A DNA stretch of 64,000 bases. It comes from Auanema rhodensis. Its lineage: Eukaryota; Animalia; Nematoda. Location: positions 9,238,001 to 9,302,000 of the forward strand of contig OZ059894.1 of assembly GCA_964057225.1 (NCBI GenBank), written 5' to 3'. Positions within the stretch are counted from its first letter, which is position 1. Each line of letters starts with the position of its first letter. This document shows, piece after piece, positions 1 to 61,808 of this stretch. The position numbers and the translations under genes were made by a program. Below the pieces are notes generated by a model that was not told where the DNA came from, made no database searches, and was given only the letters and a program-made list of their open reading frames with translations.

Positions 1-152
1 GGAACAGAAAACTATTGTTGAAATCAATTCCAATGTTCAAACTCTGGAATTCTGGAAACTGAATAATACTCATTACTGAAACCGAAACTAGGATTCAGAT
101 GACCGAGAGAACCCAGAAAAGGAATATTTCAAGGTGTCGGAAGGTAAAACAT

Positions 153-225
153 TGCCCCGAACCAGGATCGAACTGGTGACCTTTAGATCTTCAGTCTAAC
201 GCTCTCCCAACTGAGCTATCGAGGC
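153..225 (-). tRNA. tRNA-Phe: tRNA-Phe(GAA), first complete copy of the array; represents the other copies at 153+264k
   Basis: The reverse complement is GCCTCGA TA GCTC AGTTGGGA GAGC G TTAGA CTGAAGA TCTAA AGGTC ACCAG TTCGATC CTGGT TCGGGGC A. It forms a full cloverleaf with anticodon GAA and intact A and B boxes. A TTTT Pol III terminator lies at 146-149. Confidence 0.98.
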
Positions 226-1208
226 TATGATTAGACAGAATAAAGAATTCTTGAAGAGTTATCAGGAACAGAAAACCATAGTTGGAATCAATTCCAATGT
301 TCAAACTCTGGAATCCTGGAAACTGAATAATACTCATTACTGAAACCTAAGCTAGGATTCAGATGACCGATAGAACTCAGAAAAGGAATAATTCAAGGTG
401 TTGGAAGGTAAAACATTGCCCCGAACCAGGATCGAACTGGTGACCTTTAGATCTTCAGTCTAACGCTCTCCCAACTGAGCTATCGAGGCTATGATTAGAC
501 AGAATAAAGAATTCTTGAAGAGTTATCAAGAACAGAAAACCATAGTTGGAATCAATTCCAATGTTCAAACTCTGGAATCCTGGAAACTGAATAATACTCA
601 TTACTGAAACCGAAACTAGGATTCAGAGGACCGATAGAACTCAGAAAAAGAATATTTCAAGGTGTCTGAAGGTAAAACATTGCCCCGAACCAGGATCGAA
701 CTGGTGACCTTTAGATCTTCAGTCTAACGCTCTCCCAACTGAGCTATCGAGGCTCTGATTAGACAGAATAAAGAATTCTTGAAGAGTTATCAGGAACAGA
801 AAACTATTGTTGAAAGCAATTCCAATGTTCAAACTCTGGAATTCTGGAAACTGAATAATACTCATTACTGAAACCGAAACTAGGATTCAGAGGACCGATA
901 GAACTCAGAAAAAGAATATTTCAAGGTGTCTGAAGGTAAAACATTGCCCCGAACCAGGATCGAACTGGTGACCTTTAGATCTTCAGTCTAACGCTCTCCC
1001 AACTGAGCTATCGAGGCTCTGATTAGACAGAATAAAGAATTCTTGAAGAGTTATCAGGAACAGAAAACTATAGTTGAAATCAATTCCAATGTTCAAACTC
1101 TGGAATTCTGGAAACTGAATAATACTCATTACTGAAACCGAAACTAGAATTCAGATGACCGATAGAACTCAGAAAAAGAATATTTCAAGGTGTCTGAAGG
1201 TAAAACAT

Positions 1209-1281
1209 TGCCCCGAACCATGATCGAACTGGTGACCTTTAGATCTTCAGTCTAACGCTCTCCCAACTGAGCTATCGAGGC
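1209..1281 (-). pseudogene. tRNA-Phe copy with a C61>A change in the B box/T stem; possibly inactive, or a sequencing error
   Basis: The plus strand reads accatgatcg instead of accaggatcg (g>t at 1221). This breaks the G53-C61 pair and the last base of the B box. Confidence 0.5.
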
Positions 1282-4200
1282 TATGATTAGACAGAATAAA
1301 GAATTCTTGAAGAGTTATCAGGAACAGAAAACTATTGTTGAAAGCAATTCCAATGTTCAAACTCTGGAATTCTGGAAACTGAATAATACTCATTACTGAA
1401 ACCGAAACTAGGATTCAGAGGACCGATAGAACTCAGAAAAAGAATATTTCAAGGTGTCTGAAGGTAAAACATTGCCCCGAACCAGGATCGAACTGGTGAC
1501 CTTTAGATCTTCAGTCTAACGCTCTCCCAACTGAGCTATCGAGGCTATGAGTAGAGAGAATAAAGAATTCTTGAAGAGTTATGAGGAACAGAAAACCACT
1601 GTTGAAATCAATTCGAATGTTCAAACTCTGGAATCCTCTAATCTGAATAATACTCATTACTGAAACCGAAACTAGGATTCAGATGACCGAGAGAACCCAG
1701 AAAAGGAATATTTCAAGGTGTCGGAAGGTAAAACATTGCCCCGAACCAGGATCGAACTGGTGACCTTTAGATCTTCAGTCTAACGCTCTCCCAACTGAGC
1801 TATCGAGGCTATGATTAGACAGAATAAAGAATTCTTGAAGAGTTATCAGGAACAGAAAACCACTGTTGAAAGAAATTCCAATGTTCAAACTCTGGAATTC
1901 TGGAAACTGAATAATACTCATTACTGAAACCGAAGCTAGGATTCAGATGACCGATAGAACTCAGAAAACGATTATTTCAAGGTGTCGGAAGGTAAAACAT
2001 TGCCCCGAACCAGGATCGAACTGGTGACCTTTAGATCTTCAGTCTAACGCTCTCCCAACTGAGCTATCGAGGCTATGATTAGACAGAATAAAGAATTCTT
2101 GAAGAGTTATCAGTGTCAGAAAACCACTGTTGAAATCAATTCGAATGTTCAAACTCTGGAATCCTGGAAACTGAATAATACTCATTACTGAAACCGAAAC
2201 TAGGATTCAGAGGACCGATAGAACTCAGAAAAAGAATATTTCAAGGTGTCTGAAGGTAAAACATTGCCCCGAGCCAGGATCGAACTGGTGACCTTTAGAT
2301 CTTCAGTCTAACGCTCTCCCAACTGAGCTATCGAGGCTATGAGTAGAGAGAATAAAGAATTCTTGAAGAGTTATGAGGAACAGAAAACCACTGTTGAAAT
2401 CAATTCGAATGTTCAAACTCTGGAATCCTGGAAACTGAATAATACTCATTACTGAAACCGAAGCTAGGATTCAGATGACCGATAGAACTCAGAAAAGGAA
2501 TATTTCAAGGTGTCGGAAGGTAAAACTTTGCCCCGAACCAGGATCGAACTGGTGACCTTTAGATCTTCAGTCTAACGCTCTCCCAACTGAGCTATCGAGG
2601 CTATGATTAGACAGAATAAAGAATTCTTGAAGAGTTATCAGTGTCAGAAAACCACTGTTGAAATCAATTCGAATGTTCAAACTCTGGAATCCTGGAAACT
2701 GAATAATACTCATTACTGAAACCGAAACTAGGATTCAGATGACCGAGAAAACCCAGAAAAGGAATATTTCAAGGTGTCGGAAGGTAAAACATTGCCCCGA
2801 ACCAGGATCGAACTGGTGACCTTTAGATCTTCAGTCTAACGCTCTCCCAACTGAGCTATCGAGGCTATGATTAGACAGAATAAAGAATTCTTGAAGAGTT
2901 ATGAGGAACAGAAAACCACTGTTGAAATCAATTCGAATGTTCAAACTCTGGAATCCTGGAAACTGAATAATACTCATTACTGAAACCGAAGCTAGGATTC
3001 AGATGACCGATAGAACTCAGAAAACGATTATTTCAAGGTGTCGGAAGGTAAAACATTGCCCCGAACCAGGATCGAACTGGTGACCTTTAGATCTTCAGTC
3101 TAACGCTCTCCCAACTGAGCTATCGAGGCTATGAGTAGAGAGAATAAAGAATTCTTGAAGAGTTATGAGGAACAGAAAACCACTGTTGAAAGAAATTCCA
3201 ATGTTCAAACTCTGGAATTCTGGAAACTGAATAATACTCATTACTGAAACCGAAGCTAGGATTCAGATGACCGATAGAACTCAGAAAACGATTATTTCAA
3301 GGTGTCGGAAGGTAAAACATTGCCCCGAACCAGGATCGAACTGGTGACCTTTAGATCTTCAGTCTAACGCTCTCCCAACTGAGCTATCGAGGCTATGATT
3401 AGACAGAATAAAGAATTCTTGAAGAGTTATCAGTGTCAGAAAACCACTGTTGAAATCAATTCGAATGTTCAAACTCTGGAATCCTGGAAACTGAATAATA
3501 CTCATTACTGAAACCGAAACTAGGATTCAGAGGACCGATAGAACTCAGAAAAAGAATATTTCAAGGTGTCTGAAGGTAAAACATTGCCCCGAACCAGGAT
3601 CGAACTGGTGACCTTTAGATCTTCAGTCTAACGCTCTCCCAACTGAGCTATCGAGGCTATGAGTAGAGAGAATAAAGAATTCTTGAAGAGTTATGAGGAA
3701 CAGAAAACCACTGTTGAAATCAATTCCAATATTCAAACTCTGGAATCCTGGAAACTGAATAATACTCATTACTGAAACCGAAACTAGGATTCAGAGGACC
3801 GATAGAACTCAGAAAAAGAATATTTCAAGGTGTCTGAAGGTAAAACATTGCCCCGAACCAGGATCGAACTGGTGACCTTTAGATCTTCAGTCTAACGCTC
3901 TCCCAACTGAGCTATCGAGGCTATGATTAGACAGAATAAAGAATTCTTGAAGAGTTATCAGGAACAGAAAACTATTGTTGAAATCAATTCCAATGTTCAA
4001 ACTCTGGAATTCTGGAAACTGAATAATACTCATTACTGAAACCGAAACTAGGATTCAGAGGACCGATAGAACTCAGAAAAAGAATATTTCAAGGTGTCTG
4101 AAGGTAAAACATTGCCCCGAGCCAGGATCGAACTGGTGACCTTTAGATCTTCAGTCTAACGCTCTCCCAACTGAGCTATCGAGGCTATGAGTAGAGAGAA

Positions 4201-7200
4201 TAAAGAATTCTTGAAGAGTTATGAGGAACAGAAAACCACTGTTGAAATCAATTCCAATATTCAAACTCTGGAATCCTCTAATCTGAATAATACTCATTAC
4301 TGAAACCGAAACTAGGATTCAGATGACCGAGAGAACCCAGAAAAGGAATATTTCAAGGTGTCGGAAGGTAAAACATTGCCCCGAACCAGGATCGAACTGG
4401 TGACCTTTAGATCTTCAGTCTAACGCTCTCCCAACTGAGCTATCGAGGCTATGATTAGACAGAATAAAGAATTCTTGAAGAGTTATCAGGAACAGAAAAC
4501 TATTGTTGAAATCAATTCCAATGTTCAAACTCTGGAATTCTGGAAACTGAATAATACTCATTACTGAAACCGAAACTAGGATTCAGATGACCGATAGAAC
4601 TCAGAAAACGATTATTTCAAGGTGTCGGAAGGTAAAACATTGCCCCGAACCAGGATCGAACTGGTGACCTTTAGATCTTCAGTCTAACGCTCTCCCAACT
4701 GAGCTATCGAGGCTATGATTAGACAGAATAAAGAATTCTTGAAGAGTTATCAGTGTCAGAAAACCACTGTTGAAATCAATTCGAATGTTCAAACTCTGGA
4801 ATCCTGGAAACTGAATAATACTCATTACTGAAACCGAAACTAGGATTCAGAGGACCGATAGAACTCAGAAAAAGAATATTTCAAGGTGTCTGAAGGTAAA
4901 ACATTGCCCCGAGCCAGGATCGAACTGGTGACCTTTAGATCTTCAGTCTAACGCTCTCCCAACTGAGCTATCGAGGCTATGAGTAGAGAGAATAAAGAAT
5001 TCTTGACGAGTTATGAGGAACAGAAAACCACTGTTGAAATCAATTCGAATGTTCAAACTCTGGAATCCTGGAAACTGAATAATACTCATTACTGAAACCG
5101 AAGCTAGGATTCAGATGACCGATAGAACTCAGAAAAGGAATATTTCAAGGTGTCGGAAGGTAAAACTTTGCCCCGAACCAGGATCGAACTGGTGACCTTT
5201 AGATCTTCAGTCTAACGCTCTCCCAACTGAGCTATCGAGGCTATGATTAGACAGAATAAAGAATTCTTGAAGAGTTATGAGGAACAGAAAACCACTGTTG
5301 AAATCAATTCGAATGTTCAAACTCTGGAATCCTGGAAACTGAATAATACTCATTACTGAAACCGAAACTAGGATTCAGATGACCGAGAAAACCCAGAAAA
5401 GGAATATTTCAAGGTGTCGGAAGGTAAAACATTGCCCCGAACCAGGATCGAACTGGTGACCTTTAGATCTTCAGTCTAACGCTCTCCCAACTGAGCTATC
5501 GAGGCTATGATTAGACAGAATAAAGAATTCTTGAAGAGTTATGAGGAACAGAAAACCACTGTTGAAATCAATTCGAATGTTCAAACTCTGGAATCCTGGA
5601 AACTGAATAATACTCATTACTGAAACCGAAGCTAGGATTCAGATGACCGATAGAACTCAGAAAACGATTATTTCAAGGTGTCGGAAGGTAAAACATTGCC
5701 CCGAACCAGGATCGAACTGGTGACCTTTAGATCTTCAGTCTAACGCTCTCCCAACTGAGCTATCGAGGCTATGAGTAGAGAGAATAAAGAATTCTTGAAG
5801 AGTTATGAGGAACAGAAAACCACTGTTGAAAGAAATTCCAATGTTCAAACTCTGGAATTCTGGAAACTGAATAATACTCATTACTGAAACCGAAGCTAGG
5901 ATTCAGATGACCGATAGAACTCAGAAAACGATTATTTCAAGGTGTCGGAAGGTAAAACATTGCCCCGAACCAGGATCGAACTGGTGACCTTTAGATCTTC
6001 AGTCTAACGCTCTCCCAACTGAGCTATCGAGGCTATGATTAGACAGAATAAAGAATTCTTGAAGAGTTATCAGTGTCAGAAAACCACTGTTGAAATCAAT
6101 TCGAATGTTCAAACTCTGGAATCCTGGAAACTGAATAATACTCATTACTGAAACCGAAACTAGGATTCAGAGGACCGATAGAACTCAGAAAAAGAATATT
6201 TCAAGGTGTCTGAAGGTAAAACATTGCCCCGAACCAGGATCGAACTGGTGACCTTTAGATCTTCAGTCTAACGCTCTCCCAACTGAGCTATCGAGGCTAT
6301 GAGTAGAGAGAATAAAGAATTCTTGAAGAGTTATGAGGAACAGAAAACCACTGTTGAAATCAATTCCAATATTCAAACTCTGGAATCCTCTAATCTGAAT
6401 AATACTCATTACTGAAACCGAAACTAGGATTCAGATGACCGAGAGAACCCAGAAAAGGAATATTTCAAGGTGTCGGAAGGTAAAACATTGCCCCGAACCA
6501 GGATCGAACTGGTGACCTTTAGATCTTCAGTCTAACGCTCTCCCAACTGAGCTATCGAGGCTATGATTAGACAGAATAAAGAATTCTTGAAGAGTTATCA
6601 GGAACAGAAAACTATTGTTGAAATCAATTCCAATGTTCAAACTCTGGAATTCTGGAAACTGAATAATACTCATTACTGAAACCGAAACTAGGATTCAGAT
6701 GACCGATAGAACTCAGAAAAAGAATATTTCAAGGTGTCTGAAGGTAAAACATTGCCCCGAACCAGGATCGAACTGGTGACCTTTAGATCTTCAGTCTAAC
6801 GCTCTCCCAACTGAGCTATCGAGGCTATGATTAGACAGAATAAAGAATTCTTGAAGAGTTATCAGGAACAGAAAACTATTGTTGAAATCAATTCCAATGT
6901 TCAAACTCTGGAATTCTGGAAACTGAATAATACTCATTACTGAAACTGAAACTAGGATTCAGATGACCGAGAGAACCCAGAAAAGGAATATTTCAAGGTG
7001 TCGGAAGGTAAAACATTGCCCCGAACCAGGATCGAACTGGTGACCTTTAGATCTTCAGTCTAACGCTCTCCCAACTGAGCTATCGAGGCTATGATTATAC
7101 AGAATAAAGAATTCTTGAAGAGTTATCAGGAACAGAAAACCATAGTTGGAATCAATTCCAATGTTCAAACTCTGGAATCCTGGAAACTGAATAATACTCA

Positions 7201-9656
7201 TTACTGAAACCGAAACTAGGATTCAGAGGACCGATAGAACTCAGAAAAAGAATATTTCAAGGTGTCTGAAGGTAAAACATTGCCCCGAGCCAGGATCGAA
7301 CTGGTGACCTTTAGATCTTCAGTCTAACGCTCTCCCAACTGAGCTATCGAGGCTATGAGTAGAGAGAATAAAGAATTCTTGAAGAGTTATGAGGAACAGA
7401 AAACCACTGTTGAAATCAATTCCAATATTCAAACTCTGGAATCCTCTAATCTGAATAATACTCATTACTGAAACCGAAACTAGGATTCAGATGACCGAGA
7501 GAACCCAGAAAAGGAATATTTCAAGGTGTCGGAAGGTAAAACATTGCCCCGAACCAGGATCGAACTGGTGACCTTTAGATCTTCAGTCTAACGCTCTCCC
7601 AACTGAGCTATCGAGGCTATGATTAGACAGAATAAAGAATTCTTGAAGAGTTATCAGGAACAGAAAACTATTGTTGAAATCAATTCCAATGTTCAAACTC
7701 TGGAATTCTGGAAACTGAATAATACTCATTACTGAAACCGAAACTAGGATTCAGATGACCGATAGAACTCAGAAAACGATTATTTCAAGGTGTCGGAAGG
7801 TAAAACATTGCCCCGAACCAGGATCGAACTGGTGACCTTTAGATCTTCAGTCTAACGCTCTCCCAACTGAGCTATCGAGGCTATGATTAGACAGAATAAA
7901 GAATTCTTGAAGAGTTATCAGGAACAGAAAACTATTGTTGAAATCAATTCCAATGTTCAAACTCTGGAATTCTGGAAACTGAATAATACTCATTACTGAA
8001 ACCGAAACTAGGATTCAGATGACCGATAGAACTCAGAAAAAGAATATTTCAAGGTGTCTGAAGGTAAAACATTGCCCCGAACCAGGATCGAACTGGTGAC
8101 CTTTAGATCTTCAGTCTAACGCTCTCCCAACTGAGCTATCGAGGCTATGATTAGACAGAATAAAGAATTCTTGAAGAGTTATCAGGAACAGAAAACTATT
8201 GTTGAAATCAATTCCAATGTTCAAACTCTGGAATTCTGGAAACTGAATAATACTCATTACTGAAACTGAAACTAGGATTCAGATGACCGAGAGAACCCAG
8301 AAAAGGAATATTTCAAGGTGTCGGAAGGTAAAACATTGCCCCGAACCAGGATCGAACTGGTGACCTTTAGATCTTCAGTCTAACGCTCTCCCAACTGAGC
8401 TATCGAGGCTATGATTATACAGAATAAAGAATTCTTGAAGAGTTATCAGGAACAGAAAACCATAGTTGGAATCAATTCCAATGTTCAAACTCTGGAATCC
8501 TGGAAACTGAATAATACTCATTACTGAAACCGAAACTAGGATTCAGAGGACCGATAGAACTCAGAAAAAGAATATTTCAAGGTGTCTGAAGGTAAAACAT
8601 TGCCCCGAGCCAGGATCGAACTGGTGACCTTTAGATCTTCAGTCTAACGCTCTCCCAACTGAGCTATCGAGGCTATGAGTAGAGAGAATAAAGAATTCTT
8701 GAAGAGTTATGAGGAACAGAAAACCACTGTTGAAATCAATTCCAATATTCAAACTCTGGAATCCTCTAATCTGAATAATACTCATTACTGAAACCGAAAC
8801 TAGGATTCAGATGACCGAGAGAACCCAGAAAAGGAATATTTCAAGGTGTCGGAAGGTAAAACATTGCCCCGAACCAGGATCGAACTGGTGACCTTTAGAT
8901 CTTCAGTCTAACGCTCTCCCAACTGAGCTATCGAGGCTATGATTAGACAGAATAAAGAATTCTTGAAGAGTTATCAGGAACAGAAAACTATTGTTGAAAT
9001 CAATTCCAATGTTCAAACTCTGGAATTCTGGAAACTGAATAATACTCATTACTGAAACCGAAACTAGGATTCAGATGACCGATAGAACTCAGAAAACGAT
9101 TATTTCAAGGTGTCGGAAGGTAAAACATTGCCCCGAACCAGGATCGAACTGGTGACCTTTAGATCTTCAGTCTAACGCTCTCCCAACTGAGCTATCGAGG
9201 CTATGATTAGACAGAATAAAGAATTCTTGAAGAGTTATCAGTGTCAGCAAACCACTGTTGAAATCAATTCGAATGTTCAAACTCTGGAATCCTGGAAACT
9301 GAATAATACTCATTACTGAAACCGAAACTAGGATTCAGAGGACCGATAGAACTCAGAAAAAGAATATTTCAAGGTGTCTGAAGGTAAAACATTGCCCCGA
9401 GCCAGGATCGAACTGGTGACCTTTAGATCTTCAGTCTAACGCTCTCCCAACTGAGCTATCGAGGCTATGAGTAGAGAGAATAAAGAATTCTTGACGAGTT
9501 ATGAGGAACAGAAAACCACTGTTGAAATCAATTCGAATGTTCAAACTCTGGAATCCTGGAAACTGAATAATACTCATTACTGAAACCGAAGCTAGGATTC
9601 AGATGACCGATAGAACTCAGAAAAGGAATATTTCAAGGTGTCGGAAGGTAAAACTT

Positions 9657-9729
9657 TGCCCCGAACCAGGACCGAACTGGTGACCTTTAGATCTTCAGTC
9701 TAACGCTCTCCCAACTGAGCTATCGAGGC
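9657..9729 (-). pseudogene. tRNA-Phe copy with an A58>G change in the B box; possibly inactive, or a sequencing error
   Basis: The plus strand reads ggaccgaac instead of ggatcgaac (t>c at 9672), so the B box GTTCGA becomes GTTCGG. Confidence 0.5.
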
Positions 9730-12700
9730 TATGATTAGACAGAATAAAGAATTCTTGAAGAGTTATCAGTGTCAGAAAACCACTGTTGTAATCAATTCGA
9801 GTGTTCAAACTCTGGAATCCTCGAATCTGAGTAATACTCATTACTGAAACCGAAACTAGGATTCAGAGGACCGATAGAACTCAGAAAAAGAATATTTCAA
9901 GGTGACTGAAGGTAAAACATTGCCCCGAACCAGGATCGAACTGGTGACCTTTAGATCTTCAGTCTAACGCTCTCCCAACTGAGCTATCGAGGCTATGATT
10001 AGACAGAATAAAGAATTCTTGAAGAGTTATCAGTGTCAGAAAACCACTGTTGAAATCAATTCGAATGTTCAAACTCTGGAATCCTGGAAACTGAATAATA
10101 CTCATTACTGAAACCGAAACTAGGATTCAGATGACCGAGAAAACCCAGAAAAGGAATATTTCAAGGTGTCGGAAGGTAAAACATTGCCCCGAACCAGGAT
10201 CGAACTGGTGACCTTTAGATCTTCAGTCTAACGCTCTCCCAACTGAGCTATCGAGGCTATGATTAGACAGAATAAAGAATTCTTGAAGAGTTATCAGTGT
10301 CAGAAAACCACTGTTGTAATCAATTCGAGTGTTCAAACTCTGGAATCCTCGAATCTGAGTAATACTCATTACTGAAACCGAAACTAGGATTCAGAGGACC
10401 GATAGAACTCAGAAAAAGAATATTTCAAGGTGACTGAAGGTAAAACATTGCCCCGAACCAGGATCGAACTGGTGACCTTTAGATCTTCAGTCTAACGCTC
10501 TCCCAACTGAGCTATCGAGGCTATGATTAGACAGAATAAAGAATTCTTGAAGAGTTATCAGTGTCAGAAAACCACTGTTGAAATCAATTCGAATGTTCAA
10601 ACTCTGGAATCCTGGAAACTGAATAATACTCATTACTGAAACCGAAACTAGGATTCAGATGACCGAGAAAACCCAGAAAAGGAATATTTCAAGGTGTCGG
10701 AAGGTAAAACATTGCCCCGAACCAGGATCGAACTGGTGACCTTTAGATCTTCAGTCTAACGCTCTCCCAACTGAGCTATCGAGGCTATGATTAGACAGAA
10801 TAAAGAATTCTTGAAGAGTTATGAGGAACAGAAAACCACTGTTGAAATCAATTCGAATGTTCAAACTCTGGAATCCTGGAAACTGAATAATACTCATTAC
10901 TGAAACCGAAGCTAGGATTCAGATGACCGATAGAACTCAGAAAACGATTATTTCAAGGTGTCGGAAGGTAAAACATTGCCCCGAACCAGGATCGAACTGG
11001 TGACCTTTAGATCTTCAGTCTAACGCTCTCCCAACTGAGCTATCGAGGCTATGAGTAGAGAGAATAAAGAATTCTTGAAGAGTTATGAGGAACAGAAAAC
11101 CACTGTTGAAAGAAATTCCAATGTTCAAACTCTGGAATTCTGGAAACTGAATAATACTCATTACTGAAACCGAAGCTAGGATTCAGATGACCGATAGAAC
11201 TCAGAAAACGATTATTTCAAGGTGTCGGAAGGTAAAACATTGCCCCGAACCAGGATCGAACTGGTGACCTTTAGATCTTCAGTCTAACGCTCTCCCAACT
11301 GAGCTATCGAGGCTATGATTAGACAGAATAAAGAATTCTTGAAGAGTTATCAGTGTCAGAAAACCACTGTTGAAATCAATTCGAATGTTCAAACTCTGGA
11401 ATCCTGGAAACTGAATAATACTCATTACTGAAACCGAAACTAGGATTCAGAGGACCGATAGAACTCAGAAAAAGAATATTTCAAGGTGTCTGAAGGTAAA
11501 ACATTGCCCCGAACCAGGATCGAACTGGTGACCTTTAGATCTTCAGTCTAACGCTCTCCCAACTGAGCTATCGAGGCTATGAGTAGAGAGAATAAAGAAT
11601 TCTTGAAGAGTTATGAGGAACAGAAAACTATTGTTGAAATCAATTCCAATGTTCAAACTCTGGAATTCTGGAAACTGAATAATACTCATTACTGAAACCG
11701 AAACTAGGATTCAGATGACCGATAGAACTCAGAAAAAGAATATTTCAAGGTGTCTGAAGGTAAAACATTGCCCCGAACCAGGATCGAACTGGTGACCTTT
11801 AGATCTTCAGTCTAACGCTCTCCCAACTGAGCTATCGAGGCTATGATTAGACAGAATAAAGAATTCTTGAAGAGTTATCAGGAACAGAAAACTATTGTTG
11901 AAATCAATTCCAATGTTCAAACTCTGGAATTCTGGAAACTGAATAATACTCATTACTGAAACCGAAGCTAGGATTCAGATGACCGATAGAACTCAGAAAA
12001 CGATTATTTCAAGGTGTCGGAAGGTAAAACATTGCCCCGAACCAGGATCGAACTGGTGACCTTTAGATCTTCAGTCTAACGCTCTCCCAACTGAGCTATC
12101 GAGGCTATGATTAGACAGAATAAAGAATTCTTGAAGAGTTATCAGTGTCAGAAAACCACTGTTGAAATCAATTCCAATATTCAAACTCTGGAATCCTCTA
12201 ATCTGAATAATACTCATTACTGAAACCGAAACTAGGATTCAGATGACCGAGAGAACCCAGAAAAGGAATATTTCAAGGTGTCGGAAGGTAAAACATTGCC
12301 CCGAACCAGGATCGAACTGGTGACCTTTAGATCTTCAGTCTAACGCTCTCCCAACTGAGCTATCGAGGCTATGATTAGACAGAATAAAGAATTCTTGAAG
12401 AGTTATCAGGAACAGAAAACTATTGTTGAAATCAATTCCAATGTTCAAACTCTGGAATTCTGGAAACTGAATAATACTCATTACTGAAACCGAAACTAGG
12501 ATTCAGATGACCGATAGAACTCAGAAAAAGAATATTTCAAGGTGTCTGAAGGTAAAACATTGCCCCGAACCAGGATCGAACTGGTGACCTTTAGATCTTC
12601 AGTCTAACGCTCTCCCAACTGAGCTATCGAGGCTATGATTAGACAGAATAAAGAATTCTTGAAGAGTTATCAGGAACAGAAAACTATTGTTGAAATCAAT

Positions 12701-15700
12701 TCCAATGTTCAAACTCTGGAATTCTGGAAACTGAATAATACTCATTACTGAAACTGAAACTAGGATTCAGATGACCGAGAGAACCCAGAAAAGGAATATT
12801 TCAAGGTGTCGGAAGGTAAAACATTGCCCCGAACCAGGATCGAACTGGTGACCTTTAGATCTTCAGTCTAACGCTCTCCCAACTGAGCTATCGAGGCTAT
12901 GATTAGACAGAATAAAGAATTCTTGAAGAGTTATCAGTGTCAGAAAACCACTGTTGAAATCAATTCGAATGTTCAAACTCTGGAATCCTGGAAACTGAAT
13001 AATACTCATTACTGAAACCGAAACTAGGATTCAGATGACCGAGAAAACCCAGAAAAGGAATATTTCAAGGTGTCGGAAGGTAAAACATTGCCCCGAACCA
13101 GGATCGAACTGGTGACCTTTAGATCTTCAGTCTAACGCTCTCCCAACTGAGCTATCGAGGCTATGATTAGACAGAATAAAGAATTCTTGAAGAGTTATGA
13201 GGAACAGAAAACCACTGTTGAAATCAATTCGAATGTTCAAACTCTGGAATCCTGGAAACTGAATAATACTCATTACTGAAACCGAAGCTAGGATTCAGAT
13301 GACCGATAGAACTCAGAAAACGATTATTTCAAGGTGTCGGAAGGTAAAACATTGCCCCGAACCAGGATCGAACTGGTGACCTTTAGATCTTCAGTCTAAC
13401 GCTCTCCCAACTGAGCTATCGAGGCTATGAGTAGAGAGAATAAAGAATTCTTGAAGAGTTATGAGGAACAGAAAACCACTGTTGAAAGAAATTCCAATGT
13501 TCAAACTCTGGAATTCTGGAAACTGAATAATACTCATTACTGAAACCGAAGCTAGGATTCAGATGACCGATAGAACTCAGAAAACGATTATTTCAAGGTG
13601 TCGGAAGGTAAAACATTGCCCCGAACCAGGATCGAACTGGTGACCTTTAGATCTTCAGTCTAACGCTCTCCCAACTGAGCTATCGAGGCTATGATTAGAC
13701 AGAATAAAGAATTCTTGAAGAGTTATCAGTGTCAGAAAACCACTGTTGAAATCAATTCGAATGTTCAAACTCTGGAATCCTGGAAACTGAATAATACTCA
13801 TTACTGAAACCGAAACTAGGATTCAGAGGACCGATAGAACTCAGAAAAAGAATATTTCAAGGTGTCTGAAGGTAAAACATTGCCCCGAACCAGGATCGAA
13901 CTGGTGACCTTTAGATCTTCAGTCTAACGCTCTCCCAACTGAGCTATCGAGGCTATGAGTAGAGAGAATAAAGAATTCTTGAAGAGTTATGAGGAACAGA
14001 AAACCACTGTTGAAATCAATTCCAATATTCAAACTCTGGAATCCTCTAATCTGAATAATACTCATTACTGAAACCGAAACTAGGATTCAGATGACCGAGA
14101 GAACCCAGAAAAGGAATATTTCAAGGTGTCGGAAGGTAAAACATTGCCCCGAACCAGGATCGAACTGGTGACCTTTAGATCTTCAGTCTAACGCTCTCCC
14201 AACTGAGCTATCGAGGCTATGATTAGACAGAATAAAGAATTCTTGAAGAGTTATCAGGAACAGAAAACTATTGTTGAAATCAATTCCAATGTTCAAACTC
14301 TGGAATTCTGGAAACTGAATAATACTCATTACTGAAACCGAAACTAGGATTCAGATGACCGATAGAACTCAGAAAAAGAATATTTCAAGGTGTCTGAAGG
14401 TAAAACATTGCCCCGAACCAGGATCGAACTGGTGACCTTTAGATCTTCAGTCTAACGCTCTCCCAACTGAGCTATCGAGGCTATGATTAGACAGAATAAA
14501 GAATTCTTGAAGAGTTATCAGGAACAGAAAACTATTGTTGAAATCAATTCCAATGTTCAAACTCTGGAATTCTGGAAACTGAATAATACTCATTACTGAA
14601 ACTGAAACTAGGATTCAGATGACCGAGAGAACCCAGAAAAGGAATATTTCAAGGTGTCGGAAGGTAAAACATTGCCCCGAACCAGGATCGAACTGGTGAC
14701 CTTTAGATCTTCAGTCTAACGCTCTCCCAACTGAGCTATCGAGGCTATGATTATACAGAATAAAGAATTCTTGAAGAGTTATCAGGAACAGAAAACCATA
14801 GTTGGAATCAATTCCAATGTTCAAACTCTGGAATCCTGGAAACTGAATAATACTCATTACTGAAACCGAAACTAGGATTCAGAGGACCGATAGAACTCAG
14901 AAAAAGAATATTTCAAGGTGACTGAAGGTAAAACATTGCCCCGAACCAGGATCGAACTGGTGACCTTTAGATCTTCAGTCTAACGCTCTCCCAACTGAGC
15001 TATCGAGGCTATGATTAGACAGAATAAAGAATTCTTGAAGAGTTATCAGGAACAGAAAACTATTGTTGAAATCAATTCCAATGTTCAAACTCTGGAATTC
15101 TGGAAACTGAATAATACTCATTACTGAAACCGAAGCTAGGATTCAGATGACCGATAGAACTCAGAAAAAGAATATTTCAAGGTGTCGGAAGGTAAAACAT
15201 TGCCCCGAACCAGGATCGAACTGGTGACCTTTAGATCTTCAGTCTAACGCTCTCCCAACTGAGCTATCGAGGCTATGATTAGACAGAATAAAGAATTCTT
15301 GAAGAGTTATCAGTGTCAGAAAACCACTGTTGTAATCAATTCGAGTGTTCAAACTCTGGAATCCTCGAATCTGAGTAATACTCATTACTGAAACCGAAAC
15401 TAGGATTCAGAGGACCGATAGAACTCAGAAAAAGAATATTTCAAGGTGACTGAAGGTAAAACATTGCCCCGAACCAGGATCGAACTGGTGACCTTTAGAT
15501 CTTCAGTCTAACGCTCTCCCAACTGAGCTATCGAGGCTATGATTAGACAGAATAAAGAATTCTTGAAGAGTTATCAGGAACAGAAAACTATTGTTGAAAT
15601 CAATTCCGAAGTTCAAACTCTGGAATCCTCGAATCTGAATAATACTCATTACTGAAACCGAAACTAGGATTCAGATGACCGATAGAACTCAGAAAACGAA

Positions 15701-16782
15701 TATTTCAAGGTGTCGGAAGGTAAAACATTGCCCCGAACCAGGATCGAACTGGTGACCTTTAGATCTTCAGTCTAACGCTCTCCCAACTGAGCTATCGAGG
15801 CTATGATTAGACAGAATAAAGAATTCTTGAAGAGTTATAAGGAACAAAAACCACTGTTGAAATCAATTCCGAAGTTCAAACTCTGGAATCCTCGAATCTG
15901 AATAATACTCATTACTGAAACCGAAACTAGGATTCAGATGACCGATAGAACTCAGAAAACGAATATTTCAAGGTGTCGGAAGGTAAAACATTGCCCCGAA
16001 CCAGGATCGAACTGGTGACCTTTAGATCTTCAGTCTAACGCTCTCCCAACTGAGCTATCGAGGCTATGAATAGACAGAATAAAGATTTCTTGAAGAGTTA
16101 TCAGTGTCAGAAAACCACTGTTGAAATCAATTCGATTTTTCAAACTTTGGAATCCTCGAATCTGAATGAGACTCGGCAGTAAAACAGAGATTAGGATTCA
16201 GATGACCGATAGAACTCAGAAAAGGAATAATTCAAGGTGTCGGAAGGTAAAACATTGCCCCGAACCAGGATCGAACTGGTGACCTTTAGATCTTCAGTCT
16301 AACGCTCTCCCAACTGAGCTATCGAGGCTATGATTAGACAGAATAAAGAATTCTTGAAGAGTTATAAGGAACAAAAACCACTGTTGAAATCAATTCCGAA
16401 GTTCAAACTCTGGAATCCTCGAATCTGAATAATACTCATTACTGAAACCTAAGCTAGGATTCAGATGACCGATAGAACTCAGAAAAGGAATAATTCAAGG
16501 TGTCGGAAGGTAAAACATTGCCCCGAACCAGGATCGAACTGGTGACCTTTAGATCTTCAGTCTAACGCTCTCCCAACTGAGCTATCGAGGCTATGAATAG
16601 ACAGAATAAAGATTTCTTGAAGAGTTATCAGTGTCAGAAAACCACTGTTGAAATCAATTCCAATGTTCAAACTCTGGAATTCTGGAAACTGAATAATACT
16701 CATTACTGAAACCTAAGCTAGGATTCAGATGACCGATAGAACTCAGAAAAGGAATAATTCAAGGTGTCGGAAGGTAAAACAT

Positions 16783-16855
16783 TGCCCCGAACCAGGATCG
16801 AACTGGTGACCTTTAGATCTTCAGTCTAACGCTCTCCCAACTGAGCTATCGAGGC
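16783..16855 (-). tRNA. tRNA-Phe: tRNA-Phe(GAA), last (64th) copy at the right edge of the array
   Basis: Same sequence as the consensus copy, with the TTTT terminator intact. Confidence 0.97.
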
Positions 16856-17138
16856 TATGAATAGACAGAATAAAGATTTCTTGAAGAGTTATCAGTGTCA
16901 GAAAACCACTGTTGAAATCAATTCGATTTTTCAAACTTTGGAATCCTCGAATCTGAATGAGACTCGGCAGTAAAACAGAGATTAGGATTCAGATGATCGA
17001 TACAACTCTGAGCGGAGTAGTAAAACATAAATCGAAAAGCATGTTAAAGATTTATTTTGTTGTTTTTCTAATTTTAAGTATAATAAAAGATTATATATAC
17101 CCGTTAATGATTGTACTGTCATATAAACAAAACTCCTC

Positions 17139-18399
17139 TTAGGTTTCATCTTCAAATCTTAAAAAAGTACTCAATTGATCAAGTGTTATAGAAAATGGCC
17201 GAGCTGTTTTCAGGTATGATGACTCATTCAGAAATTTTTGTGGAATATCGAGCAAAATGAAATTGTTCACAAATTCGTTGATAAGTTTTTGTGATATCAA
17301 CTTTCCTAAATATTCAAAAACTTTATTGATTAGTCGTATCTGCTTACCTTCAATATCAGATGTTTTAATAGATATTCCATCTAGATCAACTAGTATCGGC
17401 TTATTACCAATAACAACAAACTGAAATTTAATCGTATATTTTTGAATGAAAAGTAGAAAAAAGCACTTGCTGTCTTCGAAAATCATTGAAAGTAAGATGT
17501 CTATGACGTTTAACAAATTCAACAATTTCTTTGATCAATCGTACACGATATTCCCAAGATTGTTGAACCAGAAATAAGGTTGTTAATGGTGTACCTAATT
17601 CATTTTTTATACCCACATCTTCTATATGTTTAATTGGATCTTTTGGGATACAATATGATCTGATCTGAAATCAACTTGTTTTACTTTCCTCTTCAACTTG
17701 AATTAATTAACTTTAATAACATTCGGATCCTTTCCAAGTTTTACCATCCAATGAATCTCATTCATTATACTTTGCAGAACTAATAACTTGCACAGCTAGA
17801 AGATATTTGTACACATATACTCAATATAGTAAACTATTTCACCTCAGCCTGTGTGTTTTCCAAGCATGCTTGAAACGTTGGACCATTTATATTTGGAACT
17901 TTGATAATGCTAGTTGAATCATGTTCATCCAATAAAACCATTTTCTGCCAACCTTCACCGACTTTAACACGATGCCTCGCCAATAGACAATGAGGTTCAA
18001 CATCTAAACAATGCTTGTATCATTAAAATATTTAAAGGTTAATCATACCGTTTATATCCTTCAGTTTATAGCCATTTAAATGAGGCGTAAGCTGAGAAAA
18101 AAGTTCACTTTTTAAAGAATTAATTTCTGTAAATTTAAAAAACTTATTATAAAGCTGAAAACATCAAGCTGAAAACCTTCAACACGGTTATCAATATTAT
18201 ACCAGTTTTCGGAATTATATGAAAGGGTATTATGAACTGAATAGATTATTATACATACTAAAGGTAACAAGATGATCAACTTCCACATTTCATCTGAAAA
18301 ACATTTTTAAATACTTGTTTTTGAGCTCAAAAAAAAACAAAAATAATGATTTTTCATGAGATTATATAGAAAAAATAAATGCTTACTTCGAAAAAACAT
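17139..18399 (-). CDS. PKDCC/VLK-like secretory-pathway protein kinase (spliced, ~8 exons; 5' exons uncertain, alternative ATG at 18288)
   Basis: Manual splicing gives ...VKVGEGWQKMV (Gly loop)...SIIKVP (Lys)...IMNEIHWM (alphaC Glu)...PNVIKIRSYC...ELGTPLTTLFLVQQSWEYRVRLI...FNDFRRQQFVVIGNKPILVDLDG. This resembles the PKDCC motifs as I recall them (ELGAP..LLQTSWEDRFRI, LLDFRPRQF, TDLDD). There is a hydrophobic N-terminal segment (MWKLIILLPL), GT-AG introns, and a minus-strand AATAAA at 17051-17056. Confidence 0.75.
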
Positions 18400-21187
18400 A
18401 TAAATTGTCAGTGTTAAGAGTTATGAGTAATAACTTAAGAAAATTGGCATCAAAGGCCATAAATATAACAGAAAGGGACAGATTTGTGTTTAATGTGGTT
18501 GCGAACTAGCTACCACGATTTATGTCGGTTGGTGAGCTAAGCAGAGAAGACGAACTGGACTGCTGCTGAAGAAGGCACCGGAGGTTTAGTTGCCACATGA
18601 GAAAAGAAAAGGAGACAAAGAGAGAGTTATAGAGAGAAAATGAATGCGAGAGAAAACGAATGAAAGAGAGAAAGAAAGATGAACGAGATGGATCGCTGAC
18701 CATGGTCGAGCACAACGTCTTCTGTCACTCGAGACAACTAGCCATCCATCTTACAAGCGCATTTCCGAGATGTGTTTATGAACTATTTCAAGATTCCATA
18801 AGAAAATAATTTTCTTGATTCTGGTTCACAAACTAAAGATTTACTGAACCAGTATTTGTTTTAGAAAAATAATATGATTACTATAATATAATCAAAGTTT
18901 AGATTGTTTGTGAAACATACTGTTAAAATGAGGATTGGTTGGTTGAGATCATGTTACGTTTTAATGAAAATTAAAAATATTTTTCTCTAATCAATGAAAT
19001 TCTATCAAAATATTAAGCATATGTTGAAAATCCTTTACACATTCATAGATTTGTTATCTATCTATGTATGTTTATTGAACACAAAATATTTTCCTTTATT
19101 GGAATTTACAATCAAATATACTGATGTATAGATAAATTATTACACTTACATCTTATTCTTGAAATTATTTAATTGGAATTGAAATAACTCAAATTTATTA
19201 TTAAAAATTCAATGTATTTGATGCCGAATTCATTACTATAATGATTCGGCTTCTTTAAATCCTATTTGAGCATTCTGAAGCCTGTCTTAAAACTATGTAC
19301 TTTTTTCGATTCCACTTGAAATGGAGTGCAAATGCCCTTTTTAGATCTGGGATATTCATTTCTATCTCACTTTTACGATCAAAAATCTAGAAAAACATCT
19401 TCCATAATTCACGTGATATTCAAATATATTTTTCACGTATTTATTTTGGATAAAATCATCACATACGAGCGGTTGAATTCGCTGTGCGATGTCATTCAGA
19501 TATTCTACACCAAATTCAGGTATTTTTCATTTCTATTGTTTTCTTTTCTGGTAATAATATTAAAAATATATCATGGCTTCTAATGATGTTCAGTTTTTTT
19601 TTGAATGAGTATTCAGAGTTGATCCCATTTCCCAAGCAAGTGCATCATTATTTTTTGCTCAGTAGTCCACGAAAGCATTCAGAAACAAAGGGAATTTAGT
19701 ATTAGTTTTGTGCTAATGGAACGTTTAAGTTCAAAATCGATTATATTGTAACAGACACAGCCTTTACTTATGTTCAACGCTTATGCACTATCTGATTTAA
19801 GGCGTCAACTCTAGATAGGCCTCCTGGTGACAGCATTAGTTCTTCTGCAACCTCCCGCTGAGTCGTTATCTAGTTCACTGATCGCTACCATATTTCACAG
19901 CTAACAGCAGTTCCTTTTGAGACACTTCAATTTGAGGACAAACTCACAATTTATGGTCGTCTGTGGTTAAACAGTGTATAAATAACAAACAGGGAAACAA
20001 AAAACAGCATGAAATTGTAGTACTTTACGTACATGCAGTCACGAGATCGCAGTCATCTGATTTCTTTTCTTTTCCAAATAATGCCTTTATTAATCCTTTA
20101 ATAGTTGATAAATATATGAATTATTGTTTCTTCTCTTTATAAAGATCTAGAACTATAGTTATACTATCAACAGCTCTGACTATATTTTGAGACTTCCTTG
20201 ATGGGCACAAAATATTCTCTTCACGTACAGACGTTGAATAAAAAATAGTTTTGCTTAAAGTGCCCAAACAACGTTAGAAATATAAGTTAGAAAGCTTAAT
20301 GATGTCGTTGTTAGTTCATAAGACCCAGGCAGTAGGTTAGATGTTTTTGAATGGAATTCATGACTTTGAGTTACAATTCATCAGTATGTAGACTTGTGAA
20401 ATCAAAGAAAAATTGAAATATTATGTTAAAAGTGGATGGCGCAGACAGAAAGGACGACGAGATAACAACTAGAGAGTGGAGACGTGCATGTCAGCTGAGT
20501 GCGAGGTCCTAGCACAGCGCTGGTCGATATATGTGTGTGCTGAAAAAAACGTTCAATTTTACTTTTTCTTTGCTACTTTTTATTTCTATTCATGAGCATC
20601 GTGGATCATAATACTGATAGTGAGTGGGAGTCATGAATTTCTCATCCAGCACGATGTCTTCGCAGAAGAAGCATGCATATTCTGAACGCTTCATAGTGTT
20701 GTTTGATTTAATAACTTTTGTTTTATAGTGAAGTTCAACTCATTTTGAACTTTTCTCGTGCTAAGTTCAATGAGTTATCGAACGTCCCCCCTGGGCGGCT
20801 AGCGTATTTAAACTTTTGAAAGGTGTATACTTATGCTTCAAAAATACGATTTTCCTCATTTTATCGTGTCAATGCTCACAATTTCACTCAACTTTTTCTA
20901 TTTTTCTCGCGTTTTGTTTATGTCGTGTCGTTTCTCAATCTGTTCTTCTTCTTTAGGTATCCCCGGTGTGTGACATCTATAGCCGGACCGAAGGAGACCT
21001 CAGCATCTAAGAATATTCTCACCAATTGCTTGAAGGTCCCCGTACCTTCAATTTTATTACGGGTCCACATTTTAACATTTTCTCAGGTTAATTGTATGAG
21101 CCTAGGAATTTTATACCCTTGAGCTTTCGAAAAAAGGTTGTTTTCATCAATAATACTTTGGAGACTGTTAATATTTCAGTGATCAGA

Positions 21188-22483
21188 ATGTCGAAAAGAC
21201 CATCTCGTGCTGCATCCCATGCTGGTTCCTGGTATTCCGCTAACTCTAAAGAACTTGATAAACAACTTTCCAAATGGCTTGAAGGTGCTGGTCCACGCCT
21301 TGGGACAGCAAGAGCCATAATTTCTCCGTAAGTGCATATTTCCTAGAAGTTTTTCCTCGTATGTTTCTATATATATATATATATAGAATTATTTTTCAGC
21401 CATGCAGGCTATTCCTATTCGGGGGAAGTTGCTGGATATGCCTTCAAGCAGATTGTTCCTGATACAGTGTAAGTATCTATGAACAATTATTTTCGTAGTG
21501 ATTCATCATTTAAAGCGACCGGATTTTCATACTTGGGCCTTCTCATGTAGTATCATTGCATGGCTGTGCTGTTACAACTTGTGACAAATATAAATCACCG
21601 ATTGGCGACTTACAAGTAGATACACGAGGTATAATAATATTAGTATCTTAATTAGCGAAGTTTGATGTTGTAGTTAACGAAGAATTGCTTGCTACTCGTC
21701 ATTTTGAAGTAATGGACAAAAGTTATGAAGAAGCTGAGCACAGTATTGAGATGCAAATTCCATTTATCATGAAAGTTATGGAAGGGTACTGTAATTTTGG
21801 CTACTTCTTCATTTCATTGAAATATATTTAGAAAAAGTTTCACTATTGTTCCAATTTTGGTGGGAAATCTCCGGGATAACTCCACGAAACAGACGTATGG
21901 TAAAATTTTTGGAACTTTTATGGAAAACCCTCGCAATCTTTTTGTCATATCGTCGGATTTCTGTCATTGGGGTGAGGATAGAGAATTTTTATTTTGAAAA
22001 CATCATTTCCAGGTAATCGATTTGATTATTGCAACTATAATCCTATGAGCCATACTCCTATTTTTGACCAAATCGCTCACTTGGATCGAGAGGTTTTCTC
22101 TTTCATATTAATATTTTTCGAGCATCTTAATTTTTTATCAGGGAATGAATGCTATTGAAACGTTGAATCCTCAAAAATTCTCTGATTACCTAAAGAATAC
22201 ACGCAATACCATATGTGGAAGAAATCCAATTACCATCATGCTACATGTGAGCAATTAATTAGATCATGTGAAGCTTGAAAACATCATTTTAGGCCGCGGA
22301 TCATTTCCGAATGATTAATAATCACACTCACGAGTTTCGATTTGTAAAATATGCTCAATCAAATAAGGTATTAATTTCACAGCTTGTATCATTCAACTAG
22401 TTTTAAAAATATTTCAGGTTCGTTCTCCGAATGATTCATCAGTTTCATATGCTGCAGGTGCCTTATTTATGCATCCAAAGTAA
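21188..22483 (+). CDS. memo-1: MEMO1 family protein (mediator of ErbB2-driven cell motility)
   Basis: Spliced motifs are R-ASHAGSWY, ARAIISPHAGYSY, IFILGPSH, EAEHSIEMQIPFI, FVISSDFCHWG, NTICGRNPI and DSSVSYAAG. An ATTTCAG acceptor lies just upstream of the ATG, and the stop TAA is at 22481-22483. Confidence 0.95.
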
Positions 22484-56128: not shown

Positions 56129-56168
56129 AGAGAGAGAGAGAGAGAGCGAGAGAGCGAGAGAGAGAGAG
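56129..56168. repeat. Imperfect (GA)n microsatellite
   Basis: AG run with GC interruptions. Confidence 0.8.

Positions 56169-59852: not shown

Positions 59853-59970
<118 letters not shown>

Positions 59971-61358: not shown

Positions 61359-61404
<46 letters not shown>
61359..61404. repeat. (GA)n microsatellite
   Basis: AG run visible directly. Confidence 0.9.

Positions 61405-61405
<1 letters not shown>

Positions 61406-61771: not shown

Positions 61772-61808
<37 letters not shown>
61772..61808. repeat. (CT)n microsatellite preceded by a C-rich tract
   Basis: CT run visible directly. Confidence 0.9.

What the first reader, a model, noticed from the sequence alone, without database searches (positions are those of the whole stretch)
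1..17028. A tRNA-Phe satellite: at least 64 head-to-tail tRNA-Phe(GAA) genes in a 264-bp unit
Seen: 17 kb of one tRNA gene repeated with exact spacing, each copy with A box, B box and TTTT terminator, running off the window. The tRNA is almost invariant (I find three variant positions in 73 bp, affecting 8 of 64 copies), while the 191-bp spacer has many segregating sites. Known: C. elegans tRNA genes are mostly dispersed. Long single-unit tRNA arrays are best known from Entamoeba, where a structural role has been proposed. Inference: this is more copies than translation should need for one isoacceptor. The array may be a dosage amplifier for germline/embryo, or a dense TFIIIC/Pol III (condensin-loading, insulator or pairing) platform that behaves as a functional satellite.
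Basis: partly seen in the sequence, partly recalled or inferred. Interest (0 to 1): 0.9.

Follow-up and report, generated by a model that had tools for sequence, protein, structure and literature searches.

The report
Giant tandem array of tRNA-Phe genes
A nematode chromosome carries at least 64, and probably several hundred, head-to-tail copies of an intact phenylalanine tRNA gene; the RNA-coding part stays almost unchanged while the spacers drift, a striking layout that has precedents and was noted in a 2026 preprint on what is probably this species.

Summary
The window holds 64 complete tRNA-Phe(GAA) genes on the minus strand at a 264-bp pitch. The array runs off the left edge and ends near 17011.

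Fifty-six copies are identical. Only 3 of 73 tRNA positions vary, against 53 of 191 spacer positions (P=7e-6). Constraint also covers tRNA positions outside the A and B boxes (1 of 49 variable, P=2e-6). A TTTT terminator sits at +4 in all 64 copies. So the RNA product appears to be under selection, not only a TFIIIC landing pad.

The array itself behaves like a satellite. It has 33 spacer haplotypes, neighbouring units are never identical, multi-unit blocks recur, and the edge units are diverged.

The host is a nematode, but it was not shown to be C. elegans. Circumstantial evidence points to Auanema rhodense, for which a 2026 preprint reports 19,554 tRNA loci and tRNA arrays. Unchecked earlier notes of this scan report the same 264-bp Phe unit and arrays for many other tRNA families elsewhere in this genome, so the amplification is probably genome-wide rather than Phe-specific.

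Verdict: real, and a new member of a known kind.

The parts
1..17011 (-). Tandem array of 64 complete tRNA-Phe(GAA) genes in a 264-bp unit (73-bp gene plus 191-bp spacer). It is cut by the left edge of the window.
417..489 (-). Representative majority-type tRNA-Phe(GAA) gene (unit 2). Fifty-six of the 64 copies have this sequence.
   Evidence: copies score 68.6 bits in Rfam
410..413 (-). TTTT Pol III terminator beginning 4 nt after the tRNA 3' end. It is present in all 64 units. A second run of four or more T near +32 is also kept in every unit, although the base next to it is polymorphic.
502..525 (-). Low-diversity upstream block at -36 to -13 of the next tRNA, the least variable 24-nt stretch of the spacer. 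It contains a 10-bp palindrome with an EcoRI site. Candidate TFIIIB-binding or upstream promoter region.
   Evidence: 2 of 24 sites vary, P=0.02 uncorrected, so this is suggestive only.
226..416 (-). Representative 191-bp spacer. It has no Rfam family and no unusual fold.
2265..2337 (-). One of six copies with T65C, which turns the A49-U65 pair of the T stem into an A-C mismatch. The other five are at 4113-4185, 4905-4977, 7281-7353, 8601-8673 and 9393-9465. All six share the same three variant bases in the first 53 nt of the downstream spacer.
1209..1281 (-). Single copy with C61A, a B-box and T-stem invariant. It is probably a dead copy.
9657..9729 (-). Single copy with A58G, a B-box and T-loop invariant. 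It is probably a dead copy.
15802..16855 (-). Edge units 61-64, which carry private variants and two 263-bp units. Unit 62 differs from the consensus spacer at 23 positions, against 4-12 for units 1-61 and 9-10 for units 63-64.
16856..17011 (-). Terminal degenerate partial unit, corresponding to spacer positions 36-191 and 84.6% identical to the consensus. [quoted passage not shown]

Best explanation
This is a genuine multi-copy Pol III gene array. Each 264-bp unit is a self-contained tRNA-Phe(GAA) transcription unit with internal A and B boxes, a conserved block at -36 to -13, a TTTT terminator at +4 and a back-up T run near +32.

Shown: the array turns over like a satellite. Blocks of several units recur at offsets of about 5-10 units or multiples, as expected from unequal exchange, and the edges escape homogenisation. 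The 73-nt gene and its signals stay almost invariant while the spacers differ by about 6%, and the invariance covers positions outside the promoter boxes.

Inferred: purifying selection acts on the RNA product and removes variants in the gene and its signals. The copies are transcribed and feed the tRNA-Phe pool. The array is one of many single-family tRNA arrays in this genome, probably Auanema rhodense, so tRNA gene dosage is raised across families rather than for Phe alone. The whole array may hold about 350 copies.

Open: whether this array is kept in body cells or is germline-restricted.
For: - Intact genes: 64 genes at 68.6 bits with anticodon GAA. A box 64/64, B box 62/64, TTTT at +4 in 64/64, and the second T run always kept.
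- Constraint: 3/73 against 53/191 segregating sites, Fisher P=6.9e-6.
- Location of the constraint: among all 73-nt circular windows of the unit, the minimum of 3 sites falls exactly on the tRNA, while windows within the spacer hold 17-27.
- Beyond the promoter: non-box tRNA positions are 1/49 variable, P=2.4e-6.
- The rare variants all damage the T arm, and only the mildest has spread, to 6 copies.
- Satellite-type turnover: 33 spacer haplotypes, 0/62 identical neighbours, and identical pairs peaking at lags 5, 9-10, 17, 20 and 29-30. The terminal partial unit is 84.6% identical to the consensus.
- Independent presence: DNA runs from three studies hold 82-96% of the sampled words of 14000-20000.
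- Literature: 19,554 tRNA loci with only 215 pseudogenes, and tRNA arrays, are reported in A. rhodense.
Against:
- With hundreds of copies, selection on any single copy should be weak. Invariance could partly reflect gene conversion or recent spread of a few founder units.
- Known tRNA arrays can be largely silent, as in the Arabidopsis SYY cluster.
- The copy number outside the window and the genome-wide picture rest on unchecked scan notes.
- The organism identification is circumstantial.
Confidence: 0.6

Rival explanations
1. Reserve or stage-specific array. The genes are intact but silenced in most cells and used only in particular tissues or stages, such as germline, oocytes or early embryo. 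This would resemble the Arabidopsis SYY cluster or Xenopus oocyte-type 5S genes. The array could also be germline-restricted DNA that is discarded from body cells.
For: - The Arabidopsis SYY tRNA cluster is heterochromatic and reactivated only in root-cap cells.
- The array meets genes abruptly at about 17011, and a weak half-palindrome with a GGC-N3-GCT core lies 190 bp outside it.
- Unchecked notes place candidate break sites 3.68 Mb to the left and 8.70 Mb to the right on the same piece, so two further breaks could lie between them.
Against: - No GGC-N3-GCC core, conserved in the O. tipulae break motif and said to resemble that of A. rhodense, occurs anywhere in the 64-kb window.
- The candidate at 17201 matches only about 10 of 20 specified consensus positions of the O. 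tipulae motif, a level expected by chance.
- The array is physically joined to conserved genes (Memo-like, SRCR/beta-helix, CDK5RAP3) that are unlikely to be eliminated.
Confidence: 0.2
2. Selfish or neutral satellite built from a tRNA gene. The unit spread by unequal exchange with no benefit to the worm. The tRNA looks conserved because of gene conversion from working tRNA-Phe genes elsewhere, or because mutant tRNAs are harmful, not because the copies are needed.
For: - The dynamics are typical of a satellite: block duplications and diverged edges.
- Unchecked scan notes describe satellites in this genome that derive from tRNA arrays.
- The copy number is far above that of other nematodes.
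Against: - The spacer subtypes differ by about 6% while the tRNA, the terminator and the back-up T run stay intact in every subtype.
- Conversion tracts confined to 73 bp across hundreds of copies is a less economical explanation than selection.
- Only 2 of 64 copies carry changes at invariant B-box/T-arm positions (C61A, A58G), and 6 more carry the milder T65C mismatch.
Confidence: 0.1
3. Chromatin platform. The main role is structural. Dense TFIIIC/Pol III sites would act as a condensin-loading, insulator, nuclear-pore-tethering or chromosome-pairing element, and the tRNA output would be secondary.
For: - One A/B-box pair every 264 bp leaves room for about one nucleosome per unit (inference).
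- tRNA genes are known boundary and condensin sites in yeasts, and a boundary role was proposed for the human 1q23.3 tRNA repeat.
- The array sits at a border between repeats and genes.
Against: - Constraint is as strong, or stronger, outside the boxes: 1/49 non-box sites vary against 2/24 box sites.
- The anticodon arm, the acceptor stem and both terminators are preserved. TFIIIC binding alone does not need these.
Confidence: 0.07
4. Assembly artefact. A few copies were inflated by the assembler.
For: Long identical repeats are prone to mis-assembly, and no read depth could be obtained.
Against: - There are 33 distinct spacer haplotypes in an ordered, non-periodic mosaic with no indels across 60 units.
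- The stretch's words are held by DNA runs from three studies.
- The published HiFi assembly of the probable species reports such arrays.
Confidence: 0.03

Closest known systems
tRNA, 5S and U2 tandem arrays of Auanema rhodense (bioRxiv 10.64898/2026.08.27.747507)
   Same: It is a nematode with 19,554 annotated tRNA loci, only 215 of them pseudogenes, and with tandem blocks of tRNA genes. GC content, the years of the data and the scan's other notes fit this window.
   Different: The preprint's main text mentions tRNA arrays only in passing and only among germline-restricted repeats, with RNA-gene density always below 20% per 10 kb. Here density is 28% (73/264) and the array abuts ordinary genes. 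The text gives no per-array anatomy or test of selection. That the window comes from this species is not proven.
Non-coding RNA tandem arrays of Hydractinia and Nematostella (PMC11067881)
   Same: These are animals with evenly spaced arrays of tens to hundreds of near-identical tRNA genes, for all 20 amino acids, whose function is unknown.
   Different: [quoted passage not shown] They are cnidarians, not nematodes.
Entamoeba tRNA gene arrays (PMC2652664)
   Same: Almost all tRNA genes lie in tandem arrays that make up a sizeable share of the genome, and a structural role has been proposed.
   Different: Entamoeba units hold up to 5 tRNA genes and microsatellite-like short repeats in the spacers. 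Here there is one gene per unit and no internal short repeat.
Arabidopsis SYY, Pro and Cys tRNA clusters (PMC2886086, PMC12308677, PMC10701932)
   Same: These are tandemly duplicated tRNA gene units that evolve by local duplication. They are functional genes with regulated, tissue-specific use.
   Different: They hold 27 triplet units or a few copies, lie in heterochromatin and are DNA-methylated. Here the number is much larger, each unit holds a single gene, and the chromatin state is unknown.
Human 1q23.3 tRNA variable-number tandem repeat (PMC4041453)
   Same: It is a copy-number-variable tandem repeat that carries tRNA genes and has been proposed as a boundary element.
   Different: Its unit is 7.3 kb, GC-rich and CTCF-binding, with 9-43 units. 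The scale and unit structure are very different.
Xenopus oocyte-type 5S genes and the 3.18-kb tDNA repeat; nematode 5S/SL1 arrays (own knowledge, not checked here)
   Same: These are Pol III genes amplified in tandem to raise output, in part for oogenesis and early development.
   Different: They involve different genes and units. Stage-specific use was shown there and is untested here.

Membership tests
Functional eukaryotic Pol III type-2 tRNA gene (tRNA-Phe) | Cloverleaf that scores above the family threshold, with a GAA anticodon | tested here: met
   ARAGORN tRNA-Phe(GAA) genes. Rfam scores the copies 68.6 bits against a gathering score of 29.
Functional eukaryotic Pol III type-2 tRNA gene (tRNA-Phe) | Intact internal A and B box promoter | tested here: met
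   The A box is identical in 64/64 copies and the B box is intact in 62/64.
Functional eukaryotic Pol III type-2 tRNA gene (tRNA-Phe) | Run of at least four T shortly after the 3' end; no encoded CCA | tested here: met
   TTTT starts at +4 in 64/64 copies, with a back-up T run near +32. The bases after position 73 are not CCA.
Functional eukaryotic Pol III type-2 tRNA gene (tRNA-Phe) | Phe identity set (G20, G34-A35-A36, A73; from established knowledge of yeast and human PheRS) | tested here: met
   Read from the majority sequence and the anticodon call.
Functional eukaryotic Pol III type-2 tRNA gene (tRNA-Phe) | Transcribed, processed and aminoacylated | not testable with these tools
Genome-wide tandem tRNA gene arrays (Entamoeba / Hydractinia kind) | Head-to-tail units, each with an intact tRNA gene, in tens to hundreds of copies | tested here: met
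Genome-wide tandem tRNA gene arrays (Entamoeba / Hydractinia kind) | Most tRNA families of the genome organised this way | tested here: inconclusive
   This rests only on unchecked scan notes (arrays for Ile, Ala, Tyr, Trp, Asp, Met, Gly and Arg-derived units) and on the preprint's count. The window also holds one lone tRNA-Ala gene.
Entamoeba-type array specifically | Short tandem repeats in the spacers and several tRNA genes per unit | tested here: not met
   Tandem Repeats Finder finds only the 264-bp period inside the array, and each unit holds one gene.
Satellite DNA evolving by unequal exchange | Mosaic or higher-order block structure, with more diverged units at the array edge | tested here: met
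Satellite DNA evolving by unequal exchange | No sequence constraint within the unit | tested here: not met
   The tRNA window has 3 variable sites against 17-27 in spacer windows.
Germline-restricted repeat removed by programmed DNA elimination | Separated from retained genes by a palindromic break motif with a GGC-N3-GCC core | tested here: not met
   The window holds no GGC-N3-GCC. The best one-mismatch candidate, at 17201, is at chance level. The exact A. rhodense motif is not available as text, so a divergent site cannot be excluded.
Germline-restricted repeat removed by programmed DNA elimination | Lower read depth in somatic than in germline DNA | not testable with these tools
tRNA-derived SINE | tRNA-related head fused to an unrelated body and tail, in dispersed copies | tested here: not met
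   The tRNA is complete and is followed at once by a terminator. The copies are strictly tandem.

The most novel reading that the evidence does not exclude
The array is germline-restricted DNA, present and transcribed in the germline and the first embryonic divisions and then discarded from all body cells. Programmed DNA elimination would then act as a developmental switch of tRNA gene dosage: thousands of genes for oogenesis and early cleavage, and a few hundred for the soma.
Probability: 0.25. Interest if true: 0.8.

Novelty: new member of a known kind. Interest (0 to 1): 0.45.

Why it matters
Most animals scatter their tRNA genes. A small nematode genome that packs them into satellite-like arrays of hundreds of intact copies raises three questions: how tRNA supply is set, how selection keeps hundreds of redundant copies intact, and whether such arrays also shape chromosomes.

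This array offers clean handles for testing. It has a unique junction with ordinary genes. Its leaders differ between unit subtypes. One tRNA variant is carried by about 9% of copies and can be looked for directly in the tRNA pool.

If the species is Auanema rhodense, the arrays also bear on what programmed DNA elimination removes and why.

Tried and rejected
- **Reads:** No depth, copy-number or transcript evidence exists. Only in-window computations still read the region: my scripts, and the repeat finder by reference on 16800-28700.
- **Metagenomes:** an exact search for the conserved 24-nt spacer block found nothing.
- **Junction in other assemblies:** a look-up of the open reading frame next to the array found nothing on record.
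- **Hidden RNA in the spacer:** Rfam gave only a chance-level hit and folding was unremarkable, z=-0.75. Rejected.
- **Spacer copies elsewhere in the window:** none beyond the terminal partial unit.
- **Telomere repeats in the window:** none.
- **Break-site motif:** no GGC-N3-GCC and no convincing 29-nt palindrome near the boundary.
- **Literature:** searches for nematode tRNA arrays under several wordings found nothing until the Auanema preprint turned up.
- **C. elegans origin:** not supported.
- **tRNA-derived SINE:** rejected.
- **Species identity:** could not be proven, because organism names of the runs are coded.


Full report
**What is there.** Tandem Repeats Finder reports a single array at 1..17008 with a 264-bp period, 64.4 copies, 95% matches and no indels. 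ARAGORN finds 64 tRNA-Phe(GAA) genes, all on the minus strand. The first 60 are spaced exactly 264 bp; the last four are spaced 263/264 bp. The window begins inside a spacer, so the array continues to the left. Fifty-six genes are identical. The copies score 68.6 bits on the Rfam tRNA model, against a threshold of 29. Every copy has an identical A box, 62 of 64 have an intact B box, and all 64 have TTTT starting 4 nt after the 3' end. All keep a second run of four or more T near +32, even though the base next to it is polymorphic.

**Constraint.** In an alignment of the 64 units, nucleotide diversity is 0.0032 in the 73-nt gene and 0.058 in the 191-nt spacer. Three of 73 gene sites vary, against 53 of 191 spacer sites (Fisher P=6.9e-6). 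When a 73-nt window is slid around the unit, the minimum of 3 variable sites falls exactly on the tRNA, while windows lying wholly in the spacer hold 17-27.
- The 49 tRNA positions outside the A and B boxes have one variable site where 13.6 would be expected (P=2.4e-6). The constraint is therefore on the RNA, not only on the TFIIIC binding sites.
- All three variants damage the T arm: an A-C mismatch at 49-65, and changes at the invariant positions 58 and 61. Only the mildest has spread.
- The least variable 24-nt stretch of the spacer lies at -36 to -13, where TFIIIB would sit. This is only suggestive (2 of 24 sites, P=0.02 uncorrected).

**How the array evolves.** There are 33 spacer haplotypes. 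Neighbouring units are never identical (0 of 62), and mean spacer distance is about 5.8% at all lags. Identical pairs pile up at lags 5, 9-10, 17, 20 and 29-30, and runs of several units recur in the same order. This is the signature of unequal exchange duplicating blocks of several units (offsets of about 5-10 units and multiples). T65C always occurs with the same three variant bases in the first 53 nt of the downstream spacer, so it spread as a passenger. The last units carry private variants. Unit 62 differs from the consensus at 23 spacer positions. The array ends in a partial unit (16856-17011, spacer positions 36-191) that is only 84.6% identical to the consensus, as expected where homogenisation fails at an array edge. 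The spacer holds no known RNA family and has no unusual fold.

**Surroundings and organism.** To the right lie ordinary intron-rich genes: a Memo-like exon near 21.2 kb, a large SRCR/beta-helix ('bark beetle'-like) gene at about 29-43.5 kb, and a CDK5RAP3-like exon near 52.5 kb. The best named relatives of the SRCR gene are nematode proteins, with Heterorhabditis at 63%, then Thelazia, Parascaris and Ancylostoma. The host is therefore a nematode, but nothing shows that it is C. elegans. A literature search led to a 2026 preprint on Auanema rhodense.
- Its 180.9-Mb germline assembly has 19,554 tRNA loci, of which only 215 are pseudogenes.
- It describes 'arrays of 5S rRNA, several tRNA loci and U2' among germline-restricted repeats.
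- About 61% of the genome is eliminated from body cells, at 29-nt palindromic break motifs.

The 2019 short-read assembly of the same species had GC 32.2% and about 500 tRNA loci, with DNA and RNA data released in 2019. The window's non-array GC is 31-38%, mean about 34%. The runs that hold it date from 2019 (DNA and RNA), 2023 and 2024. Another agent of this scan reached the same species for a break site elsewhere in this genome. I rate the identification at about 75%; it is not proven.

**Genome-wide picture, from unchecked earlier notes of this scan.** The same 264-bp Phe unit is reported up to at least 76.6 kb to the left of this window, in the preceding window (about 186 genes), and on another piece (42 or more genes). 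Giant single-family arrays are reported for Ile, Ala, Tyr, Trp, Asp, elongator Met and Gly, along with Arg-derived satellites and retroelements that insert into arrays. If these notes are right, this array holds roughly 350 copies. The amplification is then general, which undercuts the argument that Phe alone is over-supplied.

**Germline-restricted or not?** The O. tipulae break motif has a conserved GGC-N3-GCC core, and the A. rhodense motif is said to be strikingly similar. The whole window holds no GGC-N3-GCC. Allowing one mismatch, the best candidate is centred at 17201, 190 bp outside the array. It matches only about half of the specified consensus positions of the O. tipulae motif, a level expected by chance. 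The 64 copies are thus joined to conserved genes without a recognisable break site, which favours retention in body cells. Against this, unchecked notes place candidate break sites 3.68 Mb to the left and 8.70 Mb to the right on the same piece. The preprint's layout of four breaks per autosome would put two more between them, and the array-gene border is a natural place for one. I leave this open, at about 55:45 for retained.

**What could not be done.** I therefore have no read depth, no copy-number estimate and no transcript evidence. I then worked beside those places. No pattern, genome, paper or findings search received their letters afterwards. Only in-window computations still read the region: my scripts, and the repeat finder by reference. 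A metagenome scan with a spacer motif and a look-up of the neighbouring reading frame found nothing.

**Interpretation.** The best-supported reading is a working Pol III gene array whose units are individually competent and whose RNA product is under purifying selection, embedded in satellite-type turnover (confidence 0.6). A stage-specific or germline-only reserve array is the main rival (0.2). A selfish satellite kept clean by conversion or by the toxicity of mutant tRNAs comes next (0.1). A mainly structural TFIIIC or condensin platform is disfavoured, because the constraint is not limited to the boxes (0.07). An assembly artefact is unlikely given the ordered mosaic of 33 haplotypes and the independent runs (0.03).

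**Novelty.** Tandem tRNA gene arrays are known from several sources:
- Entamoeba;
- Hydractinia and Nematostella, with tRNAs for all 20 amino acids in arrays;
- Arabidopsis;
- a human variable-number repeat;
- in passing, the A. rhodense preprint.

This array is therefore a new, well-resolved member of a known kind. What this analysis adds is the evidence for product-level selection, the block-duplication structure and the exact junction with genes.

Noticed in passing
window 29835-29908 (-): A lone, high-scoring tRNA-Ala(AGC) gene (69.5 bits) followed by long T runs. It lies between two exon-like reading frames of the SRCR/beta-helix gene, on the same strand, so it is probably intronic. Dispersed tRNA genes therefore coexist with the arrays.
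   Followed up: partly
window 17187-17215: A weak half-palindrome with a GGC-N3-GCT core, 190 bp outside the array end. It matches about 10 of 20 specified positions of the O. tipulae break-motif consensus, a level expected by chance. It would be worth checking against the real A. rhodense motif and against telomere-capped reads.
   Followed up: partly
window 502-525 and the same place in every unit: A 10-bp perfect palindrome containing an EcoRI site lies at -27 to -18 of each tRNA gene, inside the least variable part of the spacer. It is intact in 61 of the 63 units with a complete upstream region.
   Followed up: partly
runs X9, X10 and X15: Three DNA runs of one 2024 study hold 0.82, 0.43 and 0.06 of the sampled words of 14000-20000, a stretch that is half array and half unique flank. 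A run holding about half could lack one of the two halves, for example a somatic sample without the array, or it could simply be shallow.
   Followed up: no
earlier notes s1-378766, s1-378804, s1-373219 (other pieces): Dividing the lengths by the gene counts given in those notes yields about 264 bp per unit for two tRNA-Ala arrays and for the tRNA-Met array, the same pitch as the Phe array. If real, this points to a shared cassette or a constrained spacing. It rests on unchecked numbers only.
   Followed up: no
window 59853-59977, 56129-56168, 61359-61405, 61772-61808: Several long AG/TC dinucleotide microsatellites, of up to 62 repeats, cluster in the last 8 kb of the window.
   Followed up: no
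window 52346-52411 (+): A 24-bp, in-frame-sized tandem repeat of 2.2-2.8 copies lies just upstream of the CDK5RAP3-like exon at 52438-52779.
   Followed up: no
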